Positions 7,101-35,900 of a stretch of DNA of 64,000 nt are shown here, one piece after another (within the stretch, counting starts at the first letter, position 1; each line of letters begins with the position of its first letter). The DNA comes from Auanema rhodensis (taxonomy: Eukaryota; Animalia; Nematoda), in NCBI GenBank assembly GCA_964057225.1, contig OZ059897.1, positions 9,796,001 to 9,860,000 of the forward strand. The letters are read 5' to 3'. Made by a program: the position numbers and the translations under genes. The notes beneath the pieces were generated by a model that had not been told where the DNA came from, did no database searches, and worked only from the letters and a program-made list of their open reading frames with translations.

Positions 7101-7474
7101 TTGGAAGATTGTAGTAAGAAAATTCAACAGGTACTTTGAATGTAATGTATTAATTAACATTTATTTGCTTATAGATGCCAGTCGTTATGCTTCCTATCCA
7201 TTTTGATAGAGATCATATCTTAGAACCTAATTCCTATCAACACTCTTTTGTTATTAGACCATTTATCACGGCCGATTTTATGACAGGAATCGCCGCAATT
7301 CCAGGAAAACACATTCCTGAAAAGGTATCAGTTTAAGCCTATTCTGCAACATATAATGGTTCGTTTTAGTCTGTGATAATGATGGCAGAAGAAATAGCTT
7401 CGCGTGTCATGGGTACATCTAGAGTAATGATTGATCTGACCAGCAAACCTCCCGGTACTACAGAATGGGAATAG
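4163..7474 (+). CDS. gmps-1: GMP synthase (glutamine-hydrolysing)
   Basis: [69 protein letters not shown]-terminal [10 protein letters not shown]. Start inferred from the first in-frame ATG. Confidence 0.95.
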
Positions 7475-8403
7475 TTTTTTTTCTTTGGCAATCCTAATAT
7501 TTTTAAAACGCTTTATTATTTTTCTAGTAACTCACGAAATTATTAAGCGAAAACACAATTACTTTGTAAAATTAAAACTTGTGGTTTACTGAATAGGCAC
7601 TTGACTTAGCATATATTACTTGTCTCGTATACGGGGTGCATATGGTTACGGCCATAAAATGCTTTTTAAACTTCTAAAATCAGACTCGTCGCATTTTGAT
7701 TTGCCTTTCAGTTAAATTGAGAAGCCTATAGTTCTACATTCCATGTGCCTTAACTTTTGTGTACGGAAAAGTATGTGATGTTAACTTGTTGTAGACATAT
7801 TAACGTTCTAGATTTAATAATTACTGCATTTGTTCGATTTCTATTTAATAATACCTGGAACTACAACGTAGTGGATAAATTTAGAATGCTTCATGAGATT
7901 TTTTAGTTTTAATTGAGAAACTCATTTTCTGTGCATTATTTGTTTAGATCAATAAAATCATTCTATCTAAGAACTATGTATTATAAAATATTTTTTACAT
8001 GTGATTTATTGCAAAGAATGTTGTTTTTCGAAGTTGTAATACTCGACTTCACTTTACATCTGTCCAGGATATATTCAAATATTGTTTGTTAAAGTTTATG
8101 AAAAAAATAAAAGAATTATCAAGCTAGATACGAATCATAGTTTAAATGGAACTTCAAAACAAATGAATCATATGCTAATAGTATAAAGTAGTCATACAAT
8201 AGACGTCAAATCGAAAATATGAGAACAGTGTGCTAGAAACAGACTTTTTTGATTTCTAAACCATACTTCAGTAGCTGTTTATAAAAAAATAAAGGTTATT
8301 TATTATTTAAATATAGTTAGAAATTGATTGGAATTTATATATATATAAAAGAAGTTAGTTTCAGTTTTGTATAAATAAACAAATAAGGAAATATTAATGT
8401 TAT

Positions 8404-10077
8404 ATGAATATGGAAGGAAGCAGTGTTGGTAATGAAAGAATTGTATTTGTTAGAAGACCCGGTAAGCTTTGTATTTTATGTTTTTAACTTTTCGATGTTT
8501 GAGGTGAAAATTCGCCACCATCTGCTGATTGCTTCCGTTGCGAGCCTTGCCATGTTCCTCTACCAGCGGAACTGAAACCCGACCAATGTATTATCCGAAC
8601 CTTGTTTCTTTCTGTTGATCCTGCACAGGTTTGTTTTTTTTATTAACTGATCAAATGAACCTATTGTAGAGATGCAGAATGAATCCTTCTACAGGTGTTG
8701 ATTATCTTGCCCCTTATGAACCAGGAGAGCTGGTTGATGGCCTTGAAGGCGTAGGTGTAGTAGAAGTAATTTCAGTTGGTCTTAAAAAAGTAATCAGATT
8801 TGTTAAGACTGCTTCAACTGGTTGCGTCTTGTCTGAAGGCGATATTGTAACTTCATGTGCACACTTATGGCCTTGGACACGCAAGTTCATTGCCGACTCA
8901 TCGGACTTAGTTAAAGTTAGTGAGCATTTATCAAGTATTCTATTCGTTATTATTAGGTGAACTTACCTCCTGGATTTTCTCCTTCAGTCATACTATCTTG
9001 TGCTGGAATTTCAGGAATGACTGCTCTAGTTGGAATTCGTAAGAAGGTTTGTTTTATTTTCATTGTTTTTATTTTTTCTGCAATTACAATTTTAATTCAC
9101 TAATTTGTTAACCATTAATTGGTTAGGATGACAACCGTTTAATCATTATTTAATTTCTAAATGAATTTGGAAGCTCACGTGAAACACCCACGTGAATGTT
9201 AAAAATATTAATACTCAAATGATATTTTATTATTTCTTCTTAGTTCACATGATTTAGGCATTGATCGATAAAACAATGCCTCAAACAATTATAATTTCTG
9301 GTGCTGCTGGTAGTTGTGGAACACTTGCCGGTCAGGTGAGAAATTAACTAACAGTATTAGAGTTATGTTTATTGCATAGATTGCAAGACTTGAAGGATGT
9401 ACAAAAGTTATTGGAATTTGTGGATCAGAAGAAAAGTGTGATGTGCTTGTAAGTATTAATTTAACTTTATTATTATTTTTATTTTCATATAGGTAAATGA
9501 ATTGGGATTTGATTCTGCTATCAATTACCGTGCAGAAGCTATCGGCGACAAGTTAAATCAAATTGCTCCTGAAGGTGTAGACATATATTGGGACAATGTA
9601 GGAGGCTTTGTTAGCGATGCTGTGATCCAAAAAGTTAGTGAAAAACATTTTTTGTTCAGTTTTTCTCCTTTTCTTTTAAAGATGAATACTGGTGGCCGAA
9701 TTGTTCTTTGTGGGCAAATAGCCGTTTATAATACTGATTTACCCTACCCTCCTCCTATTCCCGCTGAAACTGTCCAAATTATTCATGAGCGGAACATTAT
9801 GCGGTTTGCTTATTTTCATATTTTATTTGTATTCAATTTTTTCACAGTGAGAGATTTCTTTGCTTGGCTTACAAGGAAGAAATGGACAGTGCAGTAGCCC
9901 AACTTTCTCTTTGGCTCCAAGAAGGAAAACTCAAAGTTTGACTTATATTAAGATTTTTTTCAATTATTTTTGCTTAAGGTTCGCGAAACAATATATTCTG
10001 GTTTATCAACAGCTCCCGCAGCTTTTGTTGATATGATGGCCGGAAAAAATATCGGGAAAATGATGGTTCGTGTATAG
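8404..10077 (+). CDS. Prostaglandin reductase-like (PTGR2-type) MDR NADP-dependent oxidoreductase
   Basis: LSVDPAQRCRM, ISGAAGSCG, GICGSEEK, GVDIYWDNVGG, GRIVLCGQI, C-terminal GKNIGKMMVRV. Confidence 0.9.
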
Positions 10078-20675: not shown

Positions 20676-20929
20676 TTCTCCTCTAAAATATTTTGGGGTT
20701 ATTTTGTTTTAAAATATAATTCTGTCTTGCCGTTTAACCTACAAATAAGTAGATAGTTTCTTTAATTTTATGTATAAGTTGCCATCCAGCATATTTTCAA
20801 GTCTAATAGAATTTCTAGTTGTTCACATCGTTGAAAATTTTTTATGTTCGTTGCATGACATATAGTGACGCAGAGGATATTTTGTGTCTCCTCTTAATTT
20901 CTTTAAATTGAATCAATTTTTCAGACGCG

Positions 20930-23900
20930 ATGCCCTTGTTACATAAGAAACAGTTTGAAAAAAATGATATTCCGACTGGTGTTAATCCAAATACCAAAGT
21001 ATACTATCTGGAATTAAGTAACGAAATTTTTACGAATTATGAGTAAGATATAGCTTTCAAATTCATTATTTAACTGTGATTTAGTGATTTTTTTGAACGA
21101 GTAATTGCTCTTAACTCCACGCAGTGGTCTTGTGAATTCACTGGTAAAACCGGATTAACCTTTTTTGAAGCTCAGCAGTCTGAACTGGAAGCCATGGTAT
21201 GATTAGCTAATTTTTGATTGTTAACAATAAGTTCTTCTATTACAGAAGGCTTTAGATGATTTTCCTAGATATTTGGAAATTCCTATTTTGTATATAATTA
21301 AAAACTTCACATGCCGAGGAAGATTTGATGATCTTTTAAATGATATTGCTTTATTCATGAAGGTGTTTTTGGTTATATTCTTGACAGTATTTAATTTCTT
21401 CTTGTAGGATCGATATTTCATCGGAGAAAAATGCTTATTTTTAGAAGATGGAGTTAAACGAGCTGCTAAAGTTTTAGATTGTCATGTCAATGCTGAAAGA
21501 ACTCAGCTTAATAATGAGGATGTGTAAGATGCTGCTTGAACTTGTAATGTAATGTTCCTTTTTAAGACCTAAAAAGGAAGCTATCATCCCAGCTGTTGAA
21601 TCTTATCGTTATATAGTTCAGCTCCTAGAAGACACCCCTGTTGAAGATGATGATGGAATTAGGGAATATGTATCTTGTTTTACCCTTTCACGTCATAAAC
21701 AAATAGCTTCTAAACCTAAACTAAAATTATTTTTGAAAAATTTTTGTTATTTAAATGGTACAATGTACGAAGTAAAGGTTGGTTTGGAAAGAATTCAAAT
21801 ATATATATATATTCCTCCTTAATTTAGGAAAAATATCTTAAAGACGAGGTTGTTGATAATTTAAAATGGGACTCAGTTATCGGAGGGCCACAGCCTTTAT
21901 TCCCCAAAACTCCAGTGCTTCAACGAGGCCGACAACCTAAGGCTCCTGCAGCCGTACCTGCAGGAATGACTACACCCGGTATGATTTTCCAATTAGATAT
22001 GTATATTTGTGGTCACTTTTAGAAACTAAACCAGCTGTTAAAAGGAAGTCAACAGGAGGAAAAGGAATGAGTGAAAAGAAGAAACAACAGGTTTGTGTGC
22101 CATTTAAGTAATTGAAAATATTTTTTTCTTCAGATTATGTTGCAACAAGAAGAACTATCTAATATGTTTGAAGCAGCTAAACGTTTCAATGTTGATCTTG
22201 TCAAGTGAGAAAAACAAATAAATATCAGAAAATAAAATATTTTTAGATACGAGCAAACTCAACGATTACTTAGTAGCAGTGAGATTAATGATTTGAAAGA
22301 GGAGATCAAAACAGCAAAAGAACAGGTTTTTATTATTATTATTCTATATTTTCTTCATATATTGTTTTAAGAATCGTGAAGCTGCTAAGGAACAAAAGAA
22401 GTTGAAGTTAAGAGCGAAGTTTGAGTGGAATAAGAAAAGAGATGATCTTGAATGTGATGATCTTAAGGTAGTAGAGTGCAGTCAATTACTATCTACTCTA
22501 TACCTTTTAGCCATTACCGTATTTATCCAGCCTTGAATTGCCCACCTTTATGAACGATGAGGATTTTGCGGAGTATTTAGCAATTTTACAATTTTTTAAT
22601 GGGTTTTTGGAGTTACTGCCAATTAAAGAAATACGAGGTTTGATAATATTACATACAGTTATTAATTTTGTGGTTAGGTACCTCACACATATCTTTATCT
22701 GAAATAGTTGTGGCTATCAGATGCAATGATCCTCAGCAGAGTCCTTACTGTGATTTAATGAGAATATTATTATCTGCTAGATCAGAAAGAGCTGACGAAG
22801 AAGATGGAAATGAAGGTTAGAATCAGATTCAGTTGTTAAATCATCTTCAATAAGTTTTATAGCTGAAATAGATAGTCGGGAAGAGCTTCAACTAATTCAA
22901 TTACAAAATTGTGATCCTGTGCATCCAGACTATGGAGAAGAAATCAAGGATATCACTCGTCTACATAGAGATATTCGTAAAACTCATGGTATTTAGTCTG
23001 AAATATATTAAAAACATTTTAAAATTCTTGTTAGGTGAACCTGTTCGACATTTACCTGTTGATTGGATGACTTTATCTGAAGTTCTCCGACTGCTACTAC
23101 TCACATCAGGGTATTATACTGGTTCTTCTACTCACCGGCACAGATTATTTGCTCGTGGTAATTATCGAGGGTTTGTAATTACATATTTTACAAGAAATTT
23201 TGAATTATGTTTTTTTTCAGATATGAGGATCCTGGATTCCAATTCCGTAACGATAATCCCGAAACTATGGAGAAATTACGAACGGTTAGTAGAAATATGA
23301 TTTGTCTTCTTAAAAGGGAATATTTCCAGGGTACTGTATTTGATTTAACTCCTGCAGAACGATTGGCTTTAATGCAAACTTTGATATACCAACTTTTAAC
23401 TTATAATAAGGTTAGGTCTTACTAGTATAAGTTTCTAGATTTTTAAAATTAATTTAGTTTCGCACTGTTCAAGAAGAACGTATTGCTCAGCTCTATGAAA
23501 CTAAACGTGAATTAAAAAAGCTACGGCAATGGGATCAAACTCAGGATCAAGTTAGTTTTCAAAAATCCGAAATGTTTATATTAAGTGTATTCAGGAAGCT
23601 ACCCAAGCTCGACTTGTTTGTGAATATGAAATAGAGAAGGAAGGAAAGCAGAAACCTCGCACAGCTGGTACTTTTAGTTTCTAACATACCACTTTCATTT
23701 TCTCAACTTATAGGAAAAGAAACCACTAGATTGAAGGCCCATTTGAAGGCAGTAAAAGAGAATAAGAGAGTTGACAGAGATGAACTTGAGCAGGTAATAT
23801 CCGTTTAATTTAAAATTTATTAATGGTTTGTTTAGATTTTACTTGATGGAGTCGAATATGGAGAATTGAATCTTGAAGATATTATCACTACTCGAGAATA

Positions 23901-26314
23901 TCAGAAGGAAAGTATGAAAGAAGTAGAATTACAACTTTTAACCGCTGTATATGATTTATCAAGTAAGAATTATGGATTTTGTTCTGCTTATTTTATTTCA
24001 TTTTTAGCTGCTTGTGGTCAGATTTATCTTGGTCGGGATAGAGCTTTCCGAAACTATTTTTTGATAGAGTCTATTCCTGCTGTTTTAGTTGAAAGCCCAA
24101 CTGAACGCGATCAAATAGGATGTTGCGGAGAACCTACACCTTTACAAGAATCTGTAAGAAACAACTATCCTTATTTTGCAAACAGGGTTTACTTTAGAAT
24201 GGATTTAAATCTGACACGGAAGCGAGAGAAATGGTGCTGGGTTGTACTGGTGAATCTCATTCTTGCCCTGTACATGATAATGAAAATAAAAAAGTATCCA
24301 GGTGGCATTATATTCAGGATGTTGAATCTTTAGATCAGGTATGTTAGACCTTGCTCATCAAAATATTTTATTCTATTCTAGATTATCAGCGCTTGTAATC
24401 CTCGTGGTCACCGAGAATCTGAGCTAGTTGAAGAGCTCAACTACTATAAAAGAAGAATTGTTGAAGTTATAAATAAAATGGTGAGGGCTTCACCAAGTTT
24501 TACGAATTTTTATAGTTTGTTTTCAGAAAACGAAAAAAAATAATAACCAATTTTCCCTTTCTGTTCTATGCCAAGCAGAAGATCCTAATCTTCAAGCAAA
24601 TTCTATTAATTTTGAGACTGAAATGAGAGAGTTATTATTAGATTTAGAAGAAAAGGTTATTTTCATGCGTATTTTCTTTTTAATTTTTTCTTTATTAAGA
24701 TGGAGCAAGGTTTAGTTGGCCATTTGCCAAGTGGTATTGATAGAGAGGAGTGGAGACAACAACTCTTGGATACCGGCGACATTTTGTGTACAGTATCTGA
24801 CGATATGTATCTTCGTGATGAATTAGTTTTCTCAGCTGAATGTGATAAAATAAATCCATCAAACGTTAAAAAGTGTGTTTTATACATACTTTGTGTACTT
24901 AACGTTTTGTTTACAGGCTTGGTATAGCTTTTCTACAGCTTGTTCAGGGCATAGGATTGAAATATTTCCGCAATCCATTCACTCATCCTTCTCAAACAGA
25001 GCGTAAGTTTATCAAATTTAAGCATCGCTAATTGTTCAACATTTAGCTGGAACGGTTAACGCTACTAAATGTTTCTTAAGTTGGCAAAAGGGTTTAATGA
25101 ACTGCGAATCTGCATCTGCTTTATCTCTGTTTTTATCTACATTAGAACCTTCTATCCTTTGGGACAAAAGTCGACTCCAAGTAAGAAAACACGATGGGTT
25201 GTCTTTGTAAAATAATCTCTTTCAGGGGAAATGCACCACATGCCGACGTAAGGCTGCAGCCGAAGAGTTGGTGTTATGTGTTGATTGTAATAAATGTTTC
25301 CATCCTACATGTGTCAGGCTTGCCCAGAATAACATTCCTAAAACATGGGCATGCTTCGATTGTGAATCATTCAGGAAAAAAAAGGCAGCTGTTGAGAAGC
25401 GCAAAGCAACTAGAGGTATTTTTTCTATATAAAGGACCAAGATTAATAATTGTTTTAAGAAGCTGCTATTCTCGCTGCTAGTGAAAGAGATATGAATGAT
25501 GATAGTATATATGAGAATTGGGAAAATGAGTAAGTTTTCAAGTTATTCTTCTGTAATAAGCATATTGGTTTAGTGGAGAGCAGGGTGATATCACCAGGAC
25601 TAGTAGTGGAAGAACTGTTAAACGGGTCACTTATAAAACAAGTTATATTTCTCACAATACTCCACCTCTCAAATCATCTCGCCGACAATCAGCTAAATCG
25701 AATATATACGATAGTGTGGATGAAGATGAGGAAGATGATGCTACAATCGTTCGTAACAATAAGAGGAAACGAGGTTTGAAGCTAACCAAATTCGTTTCAA
25801 ACGTTATGTATTGTAGAAGAGCTCTCCAGAGAATCTGCTCTCCGAACAGCATCCACAGGCCTACGGGAACAAGATTCGAATTCTAAAGAAAAAATGATTC
25901 GCCTTGAACAGAGTATAAGGGCAGCTATGAAGCAGGACTTTGCATGGCCATTTTTAGAACCTGTTAATGCAAAAGAGGTACTGTTTCCTGCATATATCTA
26001 ACTAAAACGTTTTTTTCAATTCAAGGTACCGGACTATTATGATATTATTCAAAATCCTATTGATCTTCGAACTATGATGAATAAAATAAAAAATCATAAT
26101 TACGATGCTCCAGAAGATGTACGGTCTGACATGGCACTTCTTGTTAGCAATTGTAAATTGTATAATGAAGAAGGCAGTGAGATATTTGAGGTATCGTTTA
26201 CAGACTCCATTTGTTTAGTTTGAAATCAATTTACAGTGCGCTGTTCAAATGGAGATATTTTTCGATGATAACATGAAAGAAGTTTTTGATAATAAGAGAA
26301 TACGACGGCGATAA
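20930..26314 (+). CDS. athp-2: ACF1/BAZ1A-like ISWI accessory subunit (WAC, DDT, WHIM, PHD, bromodomain)
   Basis: MPLLHKK...WSCEFTGKTGLTFFEA (WAC), LGRDRAFRNY (WHIM2), NPRGHRESEL (WHIM3), CTTC...CVDC...HPTC...CFDC (PHD), [26 protein letters not shown] (bromo). The C. elegans symbol is from memory. Confidence 0.9.
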
Positions 26315-26755
26315 ATGATTGTTTTTTGTTTTCTAAGTGTTAATATTTCATATAATTTCGGACGAAGATGTCATAATGTGTTTTTTCACACATGTTTGCT
26401 GGATTTGCTATTAATTACTATTAGTTTTACGGTTCTGGCATTGATTCTCATATTAATCATTCGACTTTCGTGATCTTCATTACTGCAATAGGTTAACAAC
26501 TTTTGCTTGGTGCACAAATTAGATTAAAAACGCTGGTTTCTTAGGTCTCAACCCAATTATTTGTAACCCTATGAAAACATATATCATTATGTTATTAATT
26601 TTTATATTGTGTTATTGTATGCAATTTAAAACTAATTAAAGCATTGATTATAAGCTGTTAACTTATTTTATTTTCGTAGATAACGATTATTACGGCTAGT
26701 ACGCAAATGTTTTTCTTTAACATACAAATACATCTTAGTGTTGTAACAATTAATC

Positions 26756-29244
26756 ATGGAGTCCTTCCCTTCTACATCGTCTGCCATTGATGAGGGTGAT
26801 TTGGTAAGGTTTTTTTGGTCAAGGTTCTTCAAGATTAAACTATTTGTAGTTGGTACCTTGCCCAATATCTACATCAACTCATGAAAAGAAAGTTCCTAAT
26901 GGGGAAAAGGTTTAATTATGCTTAACAATGATCTTCATTTATAATATAATCTAGGCAAGAAGTATGACACGGTTGCGTAGAATAATTGATGAGATGAATG
27001 AGTTATTTGAAGAAAACTTCGTTCTTACTGTTGTTAACCCTGTATAGTTCTTTTCATATTTTTTTGATCTTTATATCTTTTTAGAATACATCAAAACATG
27101 TGTCTTTTTATGGATCGAGACCTGTTGTCAAAGCACTATACACCTCAGACTTTGTTGAAAAGTTGAAGGAGAATCTCCCAGCAACCGATAAGGTAAGATT
27201 CTGAAGCGTTTTCTTGAATTATTTTTGGTTTTAGGCTTCTATTTATATGCCTTTCACTAATATCCGTAAAGAACCCAACGAGTATATGCAATCAGAAAGT
27301 CAACTATATTCAAAAGTAATAAAGCAGACATTGTTGTCATAACTTTATTTGGTTTTTTAGATACTGCGGCTTCTTGATTTGTACAACTACCCAGCTCGCG
27401 AACATTTCAGTTATAAATCGAAAGGAAGTCGAGTTAGTTTATTTCATTTTTCAAAAGTATAAAACAGTACTTTGTGAAACCCTCTTCATTTATTATTATC
27501 AGCTATGTTATGTTATGATTTTTCGCCAGCACTGCTCTTTTTTTTGGATATTATTCCTATTTCAGGGATGTTCTCCTCGACCAAAACCTGATTATTGGCC
27601 TAAAGATGTAAAATATGGTTCTTTATTATGTGGCAATATTGCTGGTTTAACCGAGCAAAGTAAGTTTTTAATAACAAACTTGTATGATATCATTTCATTC
27701 AGACTCCACTAGAATTTTTGAAAATAGAAAAGCTATGATTCTTTTGGTACTTAATGGTGTAAGACAGCATTATCGTACTTTTTTGAAACTAATGAATGGC
27801 GTGAAACATGCCGAGGAAGAGCCAGTAGATATTGAAGATGTTGCAAACTAGTACGTTATATTTGTATTGAAGTTATTAAAATTTTTCTTAGCGAGGAGTT
27901 GCATGCTGAAAGCTCCGAAAGCAAACCCGATTTAGTCAATATGGCTCATATAGATGACAAACCATCGTCTAGTGCGATGAAGTTAGGCTCTTCAGTCGAA
28001 GGTCGGTTTGACAAATAGTGACACAGGTGAAATTCTCACAAAAAAATTTAGGAGCAAGGGACTTGCCTAAATGTTCACCTTTTAAAAAAGCTAGAATTGT
28101 CAGTCGCCCAATAGGAGTAAATGAGAGTCGCCCGAAAAGGTATTGTTTGACTGATGTCTTTTCCATGTTTCCCCAGTCTAAATGGTGCTGTTCTTTTTCT
28201 GTTGTGACCATATTTACTTAGCGTTGTTTGGCCAAGACGAGCAAGATGTGGGCAAAGACCCACTTGCCAATTTGATCTCATCTTGGGGTAGTTCTGATTT
28301 ATAGTTTTATGCGTTTCTCGGCTTTTTAAACTTATTTATTATTAGTTAAGCAAGTTATTATAGAATAGTTTACCCTATTGGAGCTGTAGGCCGATCCCCA
28401 GCTGTTCGCCAAAAATGGCCAAATTTGTCTTTCGACTCACATTCGCGAAAGTTTGCTCTGATTAGCTTTCGAAGTTACTTTACCTTCTCTTCAGTATTCC
28501 ACGAACCAGGACACGACCCATTATCACACACAAGGATAGAGTATTCACTATTGATCCTAGTGCAAGGTTACCCTCTAAGCTGTTTTTGATTATCAAACAT
28601 TGCTATTTTTAAGAAATCGATGGTCACAATATGATGTTAGACCTATGATGGAAGCAGACTTACACCCCATGGAAGATGATGTGGTCCCAACAACATCATT
28701 TTCAATGATTTCCAATAATGAGGTTTGTTTATGACTCACTACATAATCTGACCCGTTGACCATTTTTAGATAATGGGTGGTTGTACTGTTATCATTGATG
28801 GCCAAGAATATGCAGTTGTTGATGCTGATGAGGCAGTTGAACCAACAGAAGTATATGAAGAAATTAATTTACCCGAAGAAAATGGAAGTTTGATCGAAAC
28901 TAATCGAGACACTCAAATCTTACAAGCGAATAGAGGTTTTAATTATTTTCATCAAGTTAACAGTCAACATGCTTGTTTAAGAAGTCAGTGTTTCACATCA
29001 TTCATCGAAAGATACATTGCCGATAGGAAACGGGAACCTTGTGCTGTCAGACGCCGAGGGTAACCTCGATTTCAGCGGTGACCATTCGCGAAATAATGTA
29101 AGTTTCAAACGGTTCAACACCAAAACGTACAATGATATTCAGTCCAACTCCGACATGTGCAACGTTATAAGAACTGTTGTCATTAACTCGCCTGAAGGTG
29201 GTGAATTTCAAAAATCCGTTGTGAAGATTTCTCGATCAAAGTAG
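26756..29244 (+). CDS. Putative transcription factor with a divergent NRF-1/EWG-type DNA-binding domain
   Basis: Manually spliced ORF: RSMTRLRRIIDEMNELFEENFVLTVVNPNTSKHVSFYGSRPVVK, KPDYWPKDVKYG, KAMILLVLNGVRQHYRTFL, an NLS-like PFKKAR and an acidic/hydrophobic C-terminus. The gene itself is well supported; the family call is by eye. Confidence 0.6.
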
Positions 29245-29368
29245 GGATAACATAGCTGATACGCTGTCAAGGTCATACATCTCTAGACAAGTAGTAGTGG
29301 CATTAATATTGTGTTCTCTCTTTTAATCTTTAGTTACATATTCTTATTATTATGTATTTATACTCTAA

Positions 29369-29432
29369 ATATATGTATTATATATATATATATATAAATA
29401 TATTTATATATAAATATATATAATACATATAT
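29369..29432. repeat. Near-perfect 64-bp AT-rich palindrome
   Basis: Two 32-bp arms centred on 29400/29401 with no spacer and one mismatch (29388/29413). Confidence 0.9.
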
Positions 29433-29961
29433 GTTCTTATTTGAAATTTAGCCTAGAATTGTTAGTGTTCATAATAACATTTTCTTGTCGCATCTTAGTC
29501 ATCATCCATAACATTGTTCTCATGAGGGTCTCAGTAGCAATCGCTTGTTATATTGTGCTTATGTTGTCACATAACTATACAGGAATTTTTTTTTGTTTTT
29601 ATTTTAATTTTTGAAACAGTTCTCGCACTGTATTTATACTTCTACTGAATTTCACGATGATTTTTAATTTACAAATTCCCGTTTCGTCCTATTCTTATCT
29701 AGTCTTCTCATGGAAGATTGTATGAAGCAATTTGCAGGTGCATTCATTTCTTTTCACAGCGGGATACAATCATGAACATGAAAAACAGTGAAAATTCACT
29801 ATCATGAGCATTTAGCCCAATTGATTGACTTGTTTCTCTGTTCTTCTTTTATTCTTGTGCTTTTCCTTGTTTAACAGATTCCATTTTTTTTATTTCCAGA
29901 GCGAAACAAAGCCGGCTTCATCCTTTGGGGTCCGGTCTTACTGTTAGTTATATGATACACA

Positions 29962-32900
29962 ATGTATGAGGAATGGCCCATCCTAGAATTTCCTGACATT
30001 GGTGCTAGTATTTTGGGTCTTTTTACCAAGTGAGCTCAAGCATAGTCGCTAAATAATTGAAATTTTATTTTAGAAACACCAGTGAATCTGTAGCATCTTT
30101 CTTACTTTATGAATTAACAAGGGAAGAAACTGAAGATGTTCCTTCTATACGTCTTAATACAGAGGATCAACTACGTTGGTCCATGCAGGTAATTGAAATT
30201 TATAATTTTTGAATCATATTCATTGCTTAGGTTCTTAATCATGCTCTGACATTTTCGTTTATGTCTAATCGTGAATATAACACCATACGTGGAGCTGTTA
30301 AAATATATCTTCATTGGCTACGAGCTTTAACTGATCTGCCTGATGGAACTATTCCAACTCCATTGTTAGATACTCCTGAAAAATACTTTAGGTTCTTGAT
30401 ATAAATTAAAAAATTGATAAATACTATCAACTTCCAGAACCATCATCGAGGCTTTACGATGTGTTTTCTGTAGGAGGGACGACGTATCTATTGATGAGAG
30501 AAAAGAGGTTTAACACTAAATGCTTAACGAGTATATTTTTTTGTTTTTTAGGGAGAAGTATCTAATGTCCCCCGAGGACTAGCTATTGAAAGACAAGCTA
30601 CAGAAATAGAAATAATTTTAGATACTGTTAAAGCTCTTACTCAATCTGCTAGTAGAAAATATCAAAACGAAGTTTGGGCTCGATCTTTAAGCTTCTTGCT
30701 GAACTCTGCTGATCTGTTGTTATCCGATCCTTTATCATCAGGTATGCTTTTGTCGTAGATATGTGCAGTTATGATTGGTTTAGAAGAGATGGGAATCAGG
30801 GTAGGTTCTCGTGTAGTTGACACATTGTTTGAATTATGGTTCCGAGCAGTATTAAATGAAGAAATTCCATCACCTACCTATTGGAGAACTTTATCTGTAT
30901 TATGTCGGAGATGGCGACATCATGTTAGTGTGCCTGCAATTTAGTTTGAATACGTTTGATTATAGGTAACTGTTATTGAGTCGTGGGCTCGCAAGCTTTT
31001 ATCAATGACAGTATTAGTTTGTCGAAAAATGTATGGAGATGAATACAGTAGAGTTCTTATACGTAAGTATATACATTTGCACTTTTCGGTTTCGCATTTA
31101 TTTATTTTTCAGACGATGATAGTATTATTCCTTTCGGTTTATTGCCGGCTACTGACGAAGGAGAGATTGACTTGTTATATCAAAGCTGGTTTAATCTTTT
31201 GTCGTTGCTCGGTAGTCCTGCTACTATTCTTAAGCACGATCCTTCACAAAATAAACCTATCCGTGAGTTATTTTACACGATCATAAGCTGAAAGAGTTAA
31301 ATTAGTTTTTAAATACTTGCTTTGCCATTTCGAATGCAACCAACCACTCAACCCATTTCTTGGAGCAAAATAGCATACTTATTATTTCACTTTTGTCATA
31401 CACAAATTAGTTTTTATGCTTAGTTACACTTCTTTATGAAAGTTTTGTTTTGATTTTGTAAAAGAGTTAAGAGTTATCTTAGAAAATTATAATTATTTCT
31501 TGTTAAATGAATATGGTTTTTTTTGCAGATGACGGAGAAAAAATAACAGTGGGTGCAAGTGAAGGATATATTGCCGCTCTACCTTTGTGCTTCTTCTTAG
31601 CCACTACTGCAATTCAGAGAATGGTAGATGTATTCTATGGTATATCTCTGTCATCCTCCAATTATGCAAGTTTTTTTTCCAGGTGATAACAGAGTCCCCA
31701 TAGAATTTAAAGAGTCCGACATATTAATAAGAAAGTGGACTCTTTCTTCTGCAGCAGGCAGTGAGGACACAACAAGCTATCGCCACAGGAGCGAAGTATG
31801 TTTTTTTCACCTTTGATTTTTACAATTACTGCTCAGAGGGGAGAAGCTGCCAGTGGAATAACTGACCACACCAAGGATACTCAATGCACGGATTCAACAC
31901 TGACGGGTGAACGTCGTGGATCTTGCTCATCATCTGTTAGTGGCCGTGATGCTCGTTTGTCTTCAGAAATGAGTAGGAAAACGCAAAAAAGACATTCAGG
32001 CATACTATGATGTATTAAACGAGTTTCGTTATATAATTTTTTCAGATCGTAGTGGCAAGAATGAAAGTGCTTCACAAACAGTGCAACCCCATTATAATCG
32101 TGCCGAGCCATCATTGAGCCAACATGCAACTTCATTGCCACCTTTACAGGTATTTCAATAGAAAAAACCCTCTTGAATAGCATATATACAGGTCACTTCG
32201 GGATCTCAAGTGAGTCGGACAGGCGAAAGTGTAAGTACACGTTTTGATGTAAATGGAAAGGCTAGTTTAACGTCATGCGGAAATGCTCGTCCATGTGCTT
32301 CTCACTTTGTTGGACATGCTTTAAATGGTAACCGTAATATCAGCTTACATAACTAATATTTGTATATACAGCAAACCCAGCATACCCCGCATATGTAGGT
32401 GAACGTGGTCCAAAAAGCGAGAGATTACTAAATCTTACTATGAATTGGTTACTTGAAGCTAGTACCGCAGGGCGTCAGGATAAAGAACGAACAAGTGGTG
32501 GAGATGTGACAGACGGTATGTTATAACACTAGTGGACATAACACATCGATGTTATCTTTTTCCTGTTTTGCATTTTGTTTTCCTAATATGATTGGGTTGC
32601 GCTTTTCTAGTCACTTTTCTTTCCAGTGTTTGTTACTTTTTCCTCTGTTCTTTCCTTTTTTGCCCGAAAGCTTTTTATATCAAACAAGTTTTTATCTCTA
32701 CATCAGTACTTTATACTATTCGTTTCGCTGCTACTCCCACTACTCTCTATCATTCTTTCTTTCTCAATTCCTCCTCACCTTCTATCTTGTTCCCGCGTTT
32801 CATCATGGTTGTTTAATGATTTGCATAATCGTCTCACAAGCGAAAATTTAAAACTTTTCGTTTCATATGTTTCCGCTGACGACCTTCCTCTCCCGTTTTC

Positions 32901-35900
32901 GATTTTGGAAGCTCTGCTCATCTTGTTCAATTGAGGTAGAATATCAAGATTGGGTTAGGCGCGACCTTTATGTTGTATGCGCACGTTCCATTGTTTGAAG
33001 TCCTCAATAATTCCTCTTCTTTACTCTATATTGGGACATACCAGCGGGATGTTCTTCACTTCGCCAGGATTCGTTGATTTCACTCTGGAAACATTCTTTC
33101 AATAAGCTCTTTATTTCTTTTTAATATGGTATTATTATGAATAACAGTAACATACAATTCTACCTGCCTTATTGACAGTTATTCAACCTTTATCTATATG
33201 TTTGCTCAGCCTTTCTCTTTACGTGGCAGATTTTCGATCTATCTTTTTCTTTCACTATCTCTATTTCATTAAGTTTAGCCCTCATCTCTCTAACATTTAT
33301 ATCCGACCTCTCTTTTTCCCTTTTCCTGTTCCATCTCTTCCTCTAATTCTCTTCATATATATCTTTCTCTTACTCTCACAATGTATGACAGTAGATCAGC
33401 TTTCTATAGACCGATGTGCCTCATAGACAACAGAATTGGAAACCGCGTATTCATATTCCAAATAAAGCCCTGTCACTGACAGCGGCAACCAGAAACTGAC
33501 ATTCTACTCTTACGGCGACATAAATATATTCTAACTTAACCTGACCAAAACGATCCCAGATTAGAACTACCATGTCCTCGTCGTGTTAGTAATAGATAGT
33601 CATGGTCATTCCTTATATTGATTGACTTGCAACACCTGATTCTCTATGCTCTTCCTCAAATAATGTCAGTAACCAAGATTTCGATTGTCTTCTGTTTGCT
33701 TTTCAACATTTCCACCAGTCGTCTGCCTTTTCTTAGCCTTCGTTATGTAACTAAAGCCATGAATAAGATGAAGTCGTCACTGAGAACCTCTAAATTTTGG
33801 AGCTAAAGGCAATTCTTTGGGTCTTTTTGCAAACTTTTCTGATAACTTCAGATTTTTTTTCGAGAGCTACTAAGTCGTCTCATATTTGTCGCCGCCTGTT
33901 ATTTGTCTATTGTCACTTTAGTCTTCCTTCCTCTTATAGATCCTTTGAGCAATCATTGAGCATTGATTAGTCGAAACTGTAGTGTTCTCTAAATTTCTCA
34001 GCAATAATAAGCATCTCCTTATGCTGCTTGCAACATTTTCATTGTTTTTAATTTAGATAGTGGGAAATTCATCATATATTTCCTTCTTGATTAATTCAGG
34101 TAGTAATGTCCATTAAAGTTTGCATTATTGCTTATATTTCTGACCTTCATGAACTTCAAGAACCTTCTTCCAAGTGTTTAGCAATGGTTTAAATATATCA
34201 TTCCTCATAATCAAATATTTTGATTTCTTTTCATCATACTCAGCGTTTTCCAAAATACAAGTTTTTGATTTACAATTTTCTAAACTTTGTTTCTAGACAT
34301 AAATAATCATGTGTTCCCCACTAGGCATTCACTTCTGTAACCGGTTGCGGCGTGTTTAATCGCCAGCCAGCCCCATCTTTCTCTTGCTACTCGATTTCAT
34401 CCCCACATACATACATATATGGACAACGTTTTCTACTACCTTCCCACCTGTTAGTTTTCCATATATAGCTTCACCGAATTCCTATATTTGCTCTTCATCT
34501 TCTCCCAAATCATGATATGCCACGACAATCGGATTCCTCTATTTCCACTGTGTCATGTGCAGCTATCTTGTCTGCTATAAACCCCATGTTTGGGAAGATA
34601 TGGGGGTTGTCACCTGTTGGCTTAATTCAAAATTCGGATATTTGTAAGTAGCAAATGCGCAACATTCTTTGTATATGCATCTAATTGTTATGTCCTTTTG
34701 ATTGTCATTATTGTATGTGTCTATCTATCTGTCTGCGTCTACAATCGACAGCCCTATATTCCACATTAACGTTTATTAGTTATTCCTTTTAATGCGAGAT
34801 TTTCAGATGTGATTTCGGGATTGTCGCTCCATTCTGTAGACCTAGACGACGTACCCGATGCAATGAATAGCGTAGTAGGAGAACGAACTTATGATCAGAA
34901 GCGTCGAAGTTTTGGTAACATTTTCTAAAAATTTAGAAAACGGAAGAGATTCATTTCAGGAAGTTCCTCGTCTTCCGTAGCCGGAGATGCAGCTTCAACT
35001 TCTGAAGTCATAGCTTCTTCGCCAGATCTGCTAGCAGTGGATGGTTCGCGCTTAATACAAGATAAAATACCTCAAATTTAATAATTCAGGAGTGTCCGCC
35101 GGACGGGCAGCAGCCTTAGCAGCTCTGACAAGAATTGTCTGCTCAAAATCAACTACAGAAAGGCTACCTAATTCACAGCTGGCTGGATACATGTCAACTT
35201 TATACCAAGCTCTAATAGAGGTGTTCTATATTGTGAAATTTCCCTCATTTTGAAAATTTCAGAAGGATCGTATTGTATTGTGTTCCTTATTTTACTATGG
35301 CCATTCCCTGTTTAGACTTGGTCTTCCAGCCATAGAAGCTGTTTTACCTCATTATTTATTTGCCCTTGATATAATTTTAATAGAAAGTTCTAAACTCAGG
35401 TTTGTTTTAAATTTTTATTTTATTTTTATTCATAATGTTTTAAGACTTCACCCTTCTATTCATGAGGTGGAAATGAGAAGATGCTGCTTAAGGGCTCTTT
35501 CTTCTGTTATTTGTTGGCCAACAACCTTTGGCATGAGCAAAATACCGCGTAGGAATCAAACCTCAATATTTGTATAAACTATAAATTCAGAATTATCCGA
35601 CTCCGCCAATTTAAAATCAAGCGCTGCAACTTATTTACATCTACGTTCTCGAATTTACAAAACGTTGGTTTTCAGTCTTAGAAATGAAACAGATCCTCTT
35701 AATCTTCAAATGACGCTAGGTATACTTAAACCGAATTATGTTTATTAAACTTCCTTACCATGCAGCCATGTGCACCGTTTTAATCGAAGAGAGTTGCAAT
35801 TTTGATTTGGGATTAACGGAAGAGCAAACTAGAGAAATGATGCGGATAACTATGTCCAAAAATGGGTCCCAACCTGAAAAAGGTTTTATTTTTTCTTATT

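What the first reader, a model, noticed from the sequence alone, without database searches (positions are those of the whole stretch)
26956..27800. Divergent NRF-1/Erect-wing-type DNA-binding domain in a nematode gene
Seen: spliced exons give RSMTRLRRIIDEMNELFEENFVLTVVNPNTSKHVSFYGSRPV, then KPDYWPKDVKYG, then KAMILLVLNGVRQHYRTFL. Known (recalled): human NRF-1 has, in the same order and similar spacing, TRLLRKLRATLDEYTTRVGQQAIVLCISP...FKVFGAAPL, KPIWWPEDIPWA and QALRTIVKNCYKQHGREDLL. A basic NLS-like motif and an acidic/hydrophobic tail follow, as in NRF-1/EWG. Nuclear respiratory factor 1 is commonly described as absent from C. elegans. Inference: this may be an overlooked, highly diverged nematode NRF-1/EWG family member. 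It is fragmented into tiny exons and almost invisible in the ORF track.
Basis: partly seen in the sequence, partly recalled or inferred. Interest (0 to 1): 0.85.

Follow-up and report, generated by a model that had tools for sequence, protein, structure and literature searches.

The report
Cryptic NRF-1/EWG-derived gene in Auanema-like nematode
A 16-exon, expressed and conserved nematode gene encodes a protein whose first 215 residues are very probably a highly diverged descendant of the NRF-1/Erect-wing dimerisation and DNA-binding module. Standard domain searches miss it, and the residues that read DNA in human NRF-1 are all replaced.

Summary

Its only database relative is an unnamed 429-aa protein of Auanema sp. 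JU1783 (68% identical, collinear locus, no Pfam domain).

Undirected searches do not find NRF-1:
- Pfam gives no hit.
- PDB sequence search gives no NRF-1 hit.
- The single-sequence AlphaFold model is unusable (pLDDT 36).

Three other results point to NRF-1/EWG (Pfam PF10491):
- Protein-language-model searches of 7.7 million clusters give PF10491 as best named family for aa 36-236. It is the top hit for the DNA-binding half alone.
- A profile built from 18 diverse arthropod NRF-1/EWG/P3A2 proteins matches two collinear, equally spaced segments. None of 20,000 shuffles reaches the observed score. Each half alone gives p of about 1e-4 and 7e-4.
- hhalign returns one 157-column collinear alignment, though at a weak P of 0.02.

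The base-reading residues R206, N242 and R244 of human NRF-1 align with Y, S and L. The GKPGWG loop is gone. I therefore call it a re-wired derivative, not a canonical member.

It is under strong purifying selection. No structural confirmation was possible. Homology about 0.85; interest moderate to high.

The parts
26756..29247 (+). Complete CDS (16 exons, 515 codons plus stop) of the NRF-1/EWG-like gene
   Evidence: 15 GT..AG joints in spliced contigs of four runs. The open 1548-nt CDS was built from them. The ATG at 26756 follows an in-frame stop and matches the start of the orthologue P0001.
26684..29354 (+). Extent of the longest transcript contig (5' UTR about 72 nt, 3' UTR about 107 nt)
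   Evidence: table 8, run X1 record 2 (1730 nt).
26955..27192 (+). Exons 3-4, aa 37-101: dimerisation-domain-like segment (helix, two strands, helix) with motifs L-R-x-I-I-D-E, V-L-T-V-V-N-P and F-Y-G-S-R-P-V
   Evidence: Aligns to NRF-1/EWG profile positions 36-84: 8.4 bits alone, and 1 of 10,000 shuffles reaches it. hhalign agrees. The low-confidence AF2 model shows H-E-E-H-H order. 77% identical to P0001.
27274..27797 (+). Exons 5-8 (introns included), aa 115-215: DNA-binding-domain-like segment, basic (pI 9.7), with motifs P-x-E-x-M...Q-L, K-P-x-Y-W-P-K-D and A-M-x-x-x-V-x-N...H-x-R
   Evidence: HMM segment 158-209 aligns to profile 161-208: 5.1 bits alone, and 7 of 10,000 shuffles reach it. 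The Atlas search with the orthologous part alone gives PF10491 as first hit (0.88, 180 shared features). Charge.
27566..27659 (+). Exon 7, aa 153-183: counterpart of NRF-1 'linker2', the loop that reads DNA bases in human NRF-1. It is the best conserved exon between the two nematodes.
   Evidence: 94% identical to the JU1783 orthologue. dN is 0.118 over aa 153-215. Human N242 and R244 align with S171 and L173 (residue roles from PMC10810270).
28052..28566 (+). Exons 10-12, aa 270-352: strongly basic region (pI 11.8) with NLS-like K-K-A-R and R-P-K-R clusters
   Evidence: Composition. 58-62% identical to the orthologue. NLS function is inferred only.
28614..28935 (+). Exons 13-14, aa 353-443: acidic region (pI 4.1) with a conserved block at aa 389-425. 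Candidate activation or interaction domain.
   Evidence: The block is 84% identical to the orthologue, with dN 0.09. hhalign finds no similarity to NRF-1 here. The function is inferred.

Best explanation
The gene encodes a nuclear protein whose N-terminal 215 residues descend from the NRF-1/EWG/P3A2 module. That module is a MADS-like dimerisation domain followed by a basic helical DNA-binding domain with a long DNA-reading loop. In this Auanema-type rhabditid lineage the module has diverged so far that Pfam no longer recognises it. The scaffold motifs remain in the same order and spacing: I-D-E helix, V-L-x-V-x-x-P strand, [FY]-G-x-R-P, P-x-E-x-M..Q-L, [KR]-P-x-x-W-P-K-D, and A-[LM]..V-x-N..H-x-R. 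The residues that read TGCGC in human NRF-1 (R206, N242, R244) align with Y126, S171 and L173. The G-K-P-G-W-G backbone-contact loop is not recognisable.

Shown: the gene is spliced, expressed and conserved under strong purifying selection. The loop exon is its most conserved part.

Inferred: it most likely still acts as a homodimeric DNA-binding transcription factor, with a target motif other than GCGCATGCGC. The basic region at aa 270-352 would serve nuclear import or additional DNA contact. The conserved acidic block at aa 389-425 would serve activation or partner binding.
For: Gene model and expression.

Orthologue and synteny: P0001 (Auanema sp. JU1783) is 68% identical. Gene order is the same over 14 kb and the exon boundaries match.

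Selection: dN is 0.14 in aa 37-215, while synonymous sites are saturated (pS about 0.8). Introns are 44-54% identical.

Undirected pointer to the family: Atlas feature search of aa 36-236 gives PF10491 clusters at ranks 2 and 3 (0.85, 179 shared features). The DNA-binding half alone gives PF10491 at rank 1 (0.88, 180 shared).

hhalign gives one collinear 157-column alignment, 36-208 against 98-268.

The DNA-binding-like part is basic, pI 9.7 against 9.3 for a canonical one.

The order of secondary-structure elements fits the crystal-structure description in PMC10810270.
Against: Pfam PF10491 does not hit P0001 even at E<=10, and no exon hits it. phmmer against PDB chains does not find NRF-1. 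The hhalign P-value is only 0.02, with probability about 2%.

The AF2 model is unusable (pLDDT 36), so the fold is untested.

The Atlas scores are below 0.9, and only 4 of the 10 best family-bearing hits agree. The tool flags this as a sign that the family may be wrong, and its thresholds were not calibrated for parts of proteins.

All three base-reading residues and the GKPGWG loop are lost, so DNA binding itself is not demonstrated.

My profile holds arthropod sequences only. The hypothesis came from a reader who had already seen the resemblance, so directed p-values overstate the evidence unless the Atlas pointer is accepted as independent.

No relatives were found outside one genus.
Confidence: 0.72

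Rival explanations
1. It is NRF-1-derived but no longer a sequence-specific DNA binder. It keeps the dimerisation domain and a basic surface and works as a cofactor, chromatin-associated protein or non-specific binder.
For: R206, N242 and R244 equivalents are Y, S and L, and the GKPGWG backbone-contact loop is missing (residue roles). The dimerisation-like half gives the stronger profile match.
Against: The loop exon that corresponds to the DNA-reading linker2 is the most conserved part of the protein: 94% identity and dN 0.118. The segment is strongly basic. Both facts fit a retained but re-specified nucleic-acid contact.
Confidence: 0.2
2. It is a lineage-specific orphan nuclear protein unrelated to NRF-1. 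The shared short motifs and the language-model hits are chance or convergent.
For: No hit in Pfam or PDB sequence searches. hhalign probability is about 2%. Atlas scores are below 0.9 with mixed families among the top ten. Only one genus has it.
Against: Two separate Atlas queries converge on the same family out of millions of clusters. Two halves each match the correct part of the profile, at p of about 1e-4 and 7e-4, with the same spacing. 0 of 20,000 shuffles reach the observed score.
Confidence: 0.12
3. It belongs to another family with a MADS-like dimerisation fold (SRF/MEF2 type) or to a GTF2I-like helical family, rather than to NRF-1.
Against: No Pfam SRF-TF or GTF2I hit even at E<=10. 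These clusters rank below PF10491 in both feature searches. The SRF resemblance is expected for an NRF-1 dimerisation domain.
Confidence: 0.04

Closest known systems
NRF-1 (nuclear respiratory factor 1, vertebrates); crystal structure with GCGCATGCGC DNA (Liu et al. 2023, PMC10810270)
   Same: The order of elements is the same: N-terminal acidic stretch, helix and beta-hairpin and helix dimerisation segment, linker, basic helical domain with a long loop carrying a W-P-x-D motif, then a helix ending in N-x-x-x-x-H-x-R. The spacing between the two best-matching segments is the same. The DNA-binding part is similarly basic.
   Different: About 24% identity over 157 columns. R206, N242 and R244 align with Y, S and L. 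The G-K-P-G-W-G loop is missing. There is an insertion of about 11 residues between helix alpha5 and the W-P motif. No similarity was found after the domain. It falls below the Pfam threshold.
Drosophila Erect wing (EWG), sea-urchin and arthropod P3A2 (Pfam PF10491 Nrf1_DNA-bind)
   Same: It shares the ecdysozoan form of the loop motif, W-P-K-D, where arthropods have W-W-P-K-[DE]-L-P-W. It also shares the [FY]-G-x-R-P motif and the I-D-E helix.
   Different: The arthropod proteins are almost invariant across this domain, with more than 130 invariant columns in A2 and 348-378 bits to PF10491. The nematode protein scores 7-10 bits against a profile built from them.
SRF/MADS-box dimerisation fold
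   Different: There is no SRF-TF Pfam match. MADS proteins bind DNA through the MADS domain itself and lack the second helical domain.

Membership tests
NRF-1/EWG/P3A2 (Pfam PF10491 Nrf1_DNA-bind) | Match to the Pfam PF10491 profile at or above its gathering score (23.5 bits) | tested here: not met
   hmmscan of the orthologue P0001 gives 0 families at E<=10. The single exons of the window give none. The spliced 515-aa protein itself could not be submitted, because it has no reference. My own arthropod profile gives 7.0 bits (full length) and 10.1 bits (domain).
NRF-1/EWG/P3A2 (Pfam PF10491 Nrf1_DNA-bind) | Collinear dimerisation domain, linker and DNA-binding domain with the family's scaffold motifs in order | tested here: met
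   hhalign aligns aa 36-208 with 98-268 of the family alignment in one piece of 157 columns. HMMER segments 35-82 and 158-209 fall on profile 36-84 and 161-208. Both halves are individually better than 99.9% of shuffles.
NRF-1/EWG/P3A2 (Pfam PF10491 Nrf1_DNA-bind) | Three-dimensional fold of the two domains (alpha1-4 plus beta1-2; alpha5-7 with linker2) | tested here: inconclusive
   The single-sequence AF2 model has pLDDT 36. Only the order of predicted helices and strands agrees with the crystal-structure description. No fold search was run on so poor a model.
NRF-1/EWG/P3A2 (Pfam PF10491 Nrf1_DNA-bind) | Base-reading residues R206, N242, R244 (human numbering) | tested here: not met
   By the alignments they correspond to Y126, S171 and L173 (positions). 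All three are invariant in the arthropod set, as R210, N246 and R248 in A2. Their roles are described in PMC10810270. The R206 position rests on the low-confidence part of the hhalign alignment. The ungapped alternative gives L125, also not Arg.
NRF-1/EWG/P3A2 (Pfam PF10491 Nrf1_DNA-bind) | G-R-G-K-P-G-W-G backbone-contact loop (G220, G223, W224) | tested here: not met
   No equivalent motif is present. The aligned stretch reads S-Y-K-S-K-G-S-R-G-C-S. The loop is invariant in A2.
NRF-1/EWG/P3A2 (Pfam PF10491 Nrf1_DNA-bind) | Homodimeric binding to GCGCATGCGC | not testable with these tools
   This needs EMSA, ITC or SELEX. The palindrome is absent from the 64-kb window even with one mismatch, but only 0.24 matches are expected by chance, so that says nothing.
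NRF-1/EWG/P3A2 (Pfam PF10491 Nrf1_DNA-bind) | Conserved C-terminal blocks of the family (D-G-T-V-S-I-I-Q and V-S-M-Y-Q-T-V-V) | tested here: not met
   hhalign alternative alignments find nothing beyond aa 208. The last exon, which looked faintly similar by eye, is poorly conserved in JU1783.

The most novel reading that the evidence does not exclude
Rhabditid nematodes did not simply lose NRF-1. A cryptic, fast-evolved NRF-1 descendant with a re-specified DNA-reading loop persists in at least the Auanema lineage. It may also persist, unrecognised because of tiny exons and extreme divergence, in other Rhabditina including Caenorhabditis. It would then be a transcription factor with a new target motif, and it would offer a route to how nuclear control of mitochondrial and housekeeping genes was rewired in nematodes.
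Probability: 0.3. Interest if true: 0.78.

Novelty: new variant of a known kind. Interest (0 to 1): 0.62.

Why it matters
NRF-1/EWG is an old metazoan promoter factor with an almost frozen DNA-binding domain. The arthropod proteins collected here are nearly invariant across it. From general knowledge, no member is recognised in C. elegans, and work on worm mitochondrial biogenesis assumes the vertebrate regulators are missing.

A conserved, expressed gene that keeps the NRF-1 scaffold but has replaced every base-reading residue would be a rare natural case of this domain being re-specified rather than lost. It supplies a concrete protein whose binding motif and targets can be measured. It also supplies a seed for profile searches in other nematodes.

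There is a practical lesson too. The gene is split into 48-166-nt exons. Its one deposited orthologue is unnamed, lacks any domain call and is truncated at the C-terminus.

Tried and rejected
1. Pfam on single exons gave nothing relevant, because the exons are too short.

2. PDB sequence searches with exon 7 and with P0001 gave no NRF-1 hit.

3. An Atlas search with exon 8 alone gave only noise.

4. The exhaustive phmmer search could only be given one exon (48 aa). It found a single relative, P0001. Two word-indexed searches with P0001, whole and as domain only at E<=10, found only P0001 itself. No deeper alignment could therefore be built.

5. An alignment of P0001 with the window's exons as separate rows (A1) was misaligned by MAFFT and was discarded.

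6. The single-sequence AF2 model had pLDDT 36. I did not run fold searches on it. I ran no further search on an alignment seeded with NRF-1 sequences, because that would impose the NRF-1 fold and be circular.

7. I had noticed by eye a C-terminal resemblance to NRF-1: I-R-T-V-V-I-N against Y-Q-T-V-V-T-N, and G-C-T-V-I-I-D against D-G-T-V-S-I-I-Q. I rejected it. hhalign finds no alignment there, and the last exon is poorly conserved in JU1783.

8. An acidic ORF in 28182-28304 is intronic, not part of the mRNA.

9. Intron positions do not coincide with the exon ends visible in the canonical NRF-1 loci. By eye they are offset by 4-5 codons, so they give no support.

10. No NRF-1 palindrome occurs in the window, which is uninformative.

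11. Literature searches for an explicit statement on NRF-1 in nematodes gave nothing decisive.

12. Among the metagenome loci fetched with the degenerate W-W-P..P-W-A-N-V-R pattern, L003, L024, L025 and L032 carry the vertebrate-type exon and could be human. After their first listing they were not aligned, saved or searched further.

Full report
**What is there.** The region is eukaryotic, with 33-37% G+C and introns of about 45 nt ending in TTTCAG- or TTTTAG-type acceptors. Four small runs of one study hold 44% of the sampled words of 26700-29300. When laid on 26300-29700, each contributes one contig of 1.6-1.7 kb that skips 15 segments, all GT..AG. These joints give 16 exons of 48-166 nt between 26756 and 29244. 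The transcript contig runs from 26684 to 29354. The joined CDS is open for 515 codons. An acidic ORF at 28182-28304 lies inside the 224-nt intron 10 and is not in the mRNA.

**Relatives and conservation.** No tool could take the spliced protein by reference, so I searched with its exons.
- An exhaustive phmmer search with exon 8 (48 aa) found one protein, P0001. It is 429 aa and matches at the same position, 187-232.
- Its source names P0001 'unnamed protein product [Auanema sp. JU1783]', and it has no precomputed Pfam domain.
- Two word-indexed searches with P0001, whole and as domain only at E<=10, returned only P0001 itself.
- P0001 is 68% identical to the window's protein: 77% in aa 37-101, 70-76% in aa 102-232 and 84% in aa 389-425.
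- Its locus L001 is collinear with the window over 14 kb. Both have a WAC/PHD/bromodomain gene upstream and a RALGAPB_N gene downstream. The exon boundaries are the same.
- The deposited model is truncated. An orthologue of exon 15 lies beyond its annotated stop.
- Synonymous sites are saturated (pS about 0.8) and ordinary introns are 44-54% identical. dN is only 0.14 in aa 37-215 and 0.09 in the acidic block.

The gene is therefore expressed and under strong purifying selection. The window comes from a rhabditid nematode allied to Auanema (lineage).

**Undirected tests of the NRF-1 idea fail.**
- Pfam finds nothing in P0001 at E<=10 and nothing relevant in single exons.
- phmmer against all PDB chains does not find NRF-1.
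- AlphaFold2 on P0001:30-240 without an alignment gives pLDDT 36. Only the order of predicted elements can be read from it: helix, two strands, two helices, then helix, long loop and helices. That order fits the published description of the NRF-1 dimerisation domain (alpha helices around a beta hairpin) and DNA-binding domain (alpha5, long linker2, alpha6-7).
- I ran no fold search on this model.

**An undirected pointer does exist.**
- The ESM-Atlas feature search with P0001 aa 36-236 returns an unnamed molluscan cluster first (0.91). Two PF10491 Nrf1_DNA-bind clusters follow at ranks 2 and 3 (0.85 with 179 shared features; 0.82).
- With the DNA-binding half alone (aa 108-232), the first hit of all clusters is a PF10491 cluster (0.88, 180 shared features).
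- The tool's own caveats apply. Scores under 0.9 are leads, only 4 of the 10 best family-bearing hits agree, and nothing was calibrated for parts of proteins.

**Directed test.** To obtain genuine family members without typing sequences, I scanned metagenome contigs with a degenerate DNA pattern for W-W-P-x-[DE]-[ILV]-P-W-A-N-V-R.
- 36 loci matched, including five full-length ORFs from what look like transcript contigs.
- Two of the five were checked and score 348 and 378 bits to PF10491.
- An alignment of the five (A2) retrieved 1826 proteins. The 120 listed are arthropod EWG/P3A2/NRF-1 proteins, all carrying PF10491.
- Four loci with the vertebrate-type exon, which could be human, were left out of everything after their first listing.

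From 18 sequences under 75% identical to each other, I built a domain profile and ran it with all HMMER filters off.
- Scores are 7.0 bits for the full window protein (E 1.8e-4 for one target), 10.1 bits for its aa 31-240, and 5.7 and 7.8 bits for P0001.
- Two segments match, aa 35-82 on profile 36-84 and aa 158-209 on profile 161-208. They are collinear and have the same spacing as in the family.
- None of 20,000 shuffles of the domain reaches either score, and the reversed sequences score about -1.
- Tested apart, the dimerisation half gives 8.4 bits (1 of 10,000 shuffles reaches it). The DNA-binding half gives 5.1 bits (7 of 10,000).
- hhalign of the two-species alignment against the family alignment returns one 157-column alignment, aa 36-208 against 98-268, at 24% identity. 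Its P-value is only 0.022 and its probability about 2%. The tool version gives P 0.021 for the dimerisation part.

**Weighing the evidence.** Each line is weak alone. Taken together, I put homology at about 0.85.

**What has changed.** The NRF-1-DNA structure paper names R206, N242 and R244 as the base-reading residues. It names T201, Q202, G220, G223, W224, S245, D246, K253, W258 and T259 as backbone contacts.
- In the arthropod alignment these are invariant, four positions further on: R210, N246, R248, G224, G227, W228 and so on.
- In the nematode protein the alignments place Y126 at R206, or L125 if the stretch is aligned without a gap. They place S171 at N242 and L173 at R244.
- The G-K-P-G-W-G loop has no counterpart.
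- What is kept is the scaffold: L-R-x-I-I-D-E, V-L-T-V-V-N-P, F-Y-G-S-R-P-V, P-N-E-Y-M...Q-L, K-P-D-Y-W-P-K-D and A-M-I-L-L-V-L-N...H-Y-R. The W-P-K-D form of the loop motif is the arthropod one.
- The exon encoding the loop is the best conserved exon between the two nematodes, at 94%. The segment is as basic as a canonical one, pI 9.7 against 9.3.

**Mechanism.** The steps shown are splicing, expression, conservation and probable descent from NRF-1/EWG. The mechanism itself is inferred. I think the protein most likely dimerises through aa 37-101 and binds DNA through aa 115-215 with a specificity other than GCGCATGCGC.
- The basic stretch at aa 270-352 (pI 11.8) could serve as an NLS or an extra DNA contact.
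- The conserved acidic block at aa 389-425 could be an activation or partner-binding region.
- Nothing after aa 215 resembles NRF-1.

The main rival within the homology reading is loss of sequence-specific binding. The main rival outside it is a chance resemblance in an orphan protein.

**Family placement and novelty.** It works like, and probably descends from, NRF-1/EWG. It fails two defining tests, the Pfam threshold and the base-reading residues, so I do not file it as a canonical member. I call it a new variant of a known kind.

An orthologue is deposited but is unnamed and has no domain call. The claim that nematodes otherwise lack the family therefore rests on general knowledge about C. 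elegans only. The literature searches gave no explicit statement. The scan's earlier notes on this genome contain nothing on NRF-1.

**Side observation.** Intron 10 holds a block at 28185-28279 that is 89/97 identical between the two species, against about 50% for the other introns. It has no Rfam match and no stable fold on either strand. It remains unexplained.

Noticed in passing
window 28185-28306 (intron 10 of the gene); L001 about 7448-7545: This noncoding block is 89/97 columns identical to the orthologous intron of Auanema sp. JU1783. The other 12 introns are 44-54% identical and synonymous sites are saturated. It is not in the spliced contigs, has no Rfam family and has no stable fold on either strand. 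A 66-nt in-frame cassette exon is possible in the window, but the same frame has a stop in JU1783.
   Followed up: partly
L001 8537-8658 and about 8700-8790: The deposited protein of Auanema sp. JU1783 (P0001, 429 aa) is a truncated gene model. Sequence orthologous to the window's exon 15, and probably exon 16, lies downstream of its annotated stop. The last exon is poorly conserved and seems to end about 7 codons earlier.
   Followed up: partly
window about 20800-26310 (+) and about 29956-34900 (+): The neighbouring genes are a WAC/WSD/PHD/bromodomain protein (ACF1/BAZ1A-like) upstream and a RALGAPB_N-domain protein downstream. Both are collinear with L001 exon by exon. The RNA contigs of the upstream gene end at about 26535-26611.
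   Followed up: partly
window 29366-29432: An AT-rich simple repeat (TA/TATA-type) lies just after the 3' UTR. The read tool skipped it as a repeat.
   Followed up: no
Atlas result for P0001 aa 36-236: The nearest cluster of all (0.91, 205 of 256 features) is an unnamed 210-aa molluscan family without any Pfam domain. It ranks above the PF10491 clusters and might be another unrecognised NRF-1-like lineage. Its sequences could not be fetched.
   Followed up: no
L003, L024, L025, L032 (metagenome contigs): These contigs carry the vertebrate-type NRF-1 exon and may be vertebrate, possibly human, contamination of metagenomes. They were listed once and then left unused.
   Followed up: no
L002/L028, L008, L009/L020 (metagenome contigs): These carry non-arthropod NRF-1-type exons with S-K-P-G-W-G and W-W-P-[SN]-D-L-P-W-A-N-V-R. 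In all of them the exon starts at A-Q-L-R and ends at K-K-R-V, so exon boundaries are conserved in canonical NRF-1 genes. The nematode gene does not share these boundaries.
   Followed up: partly
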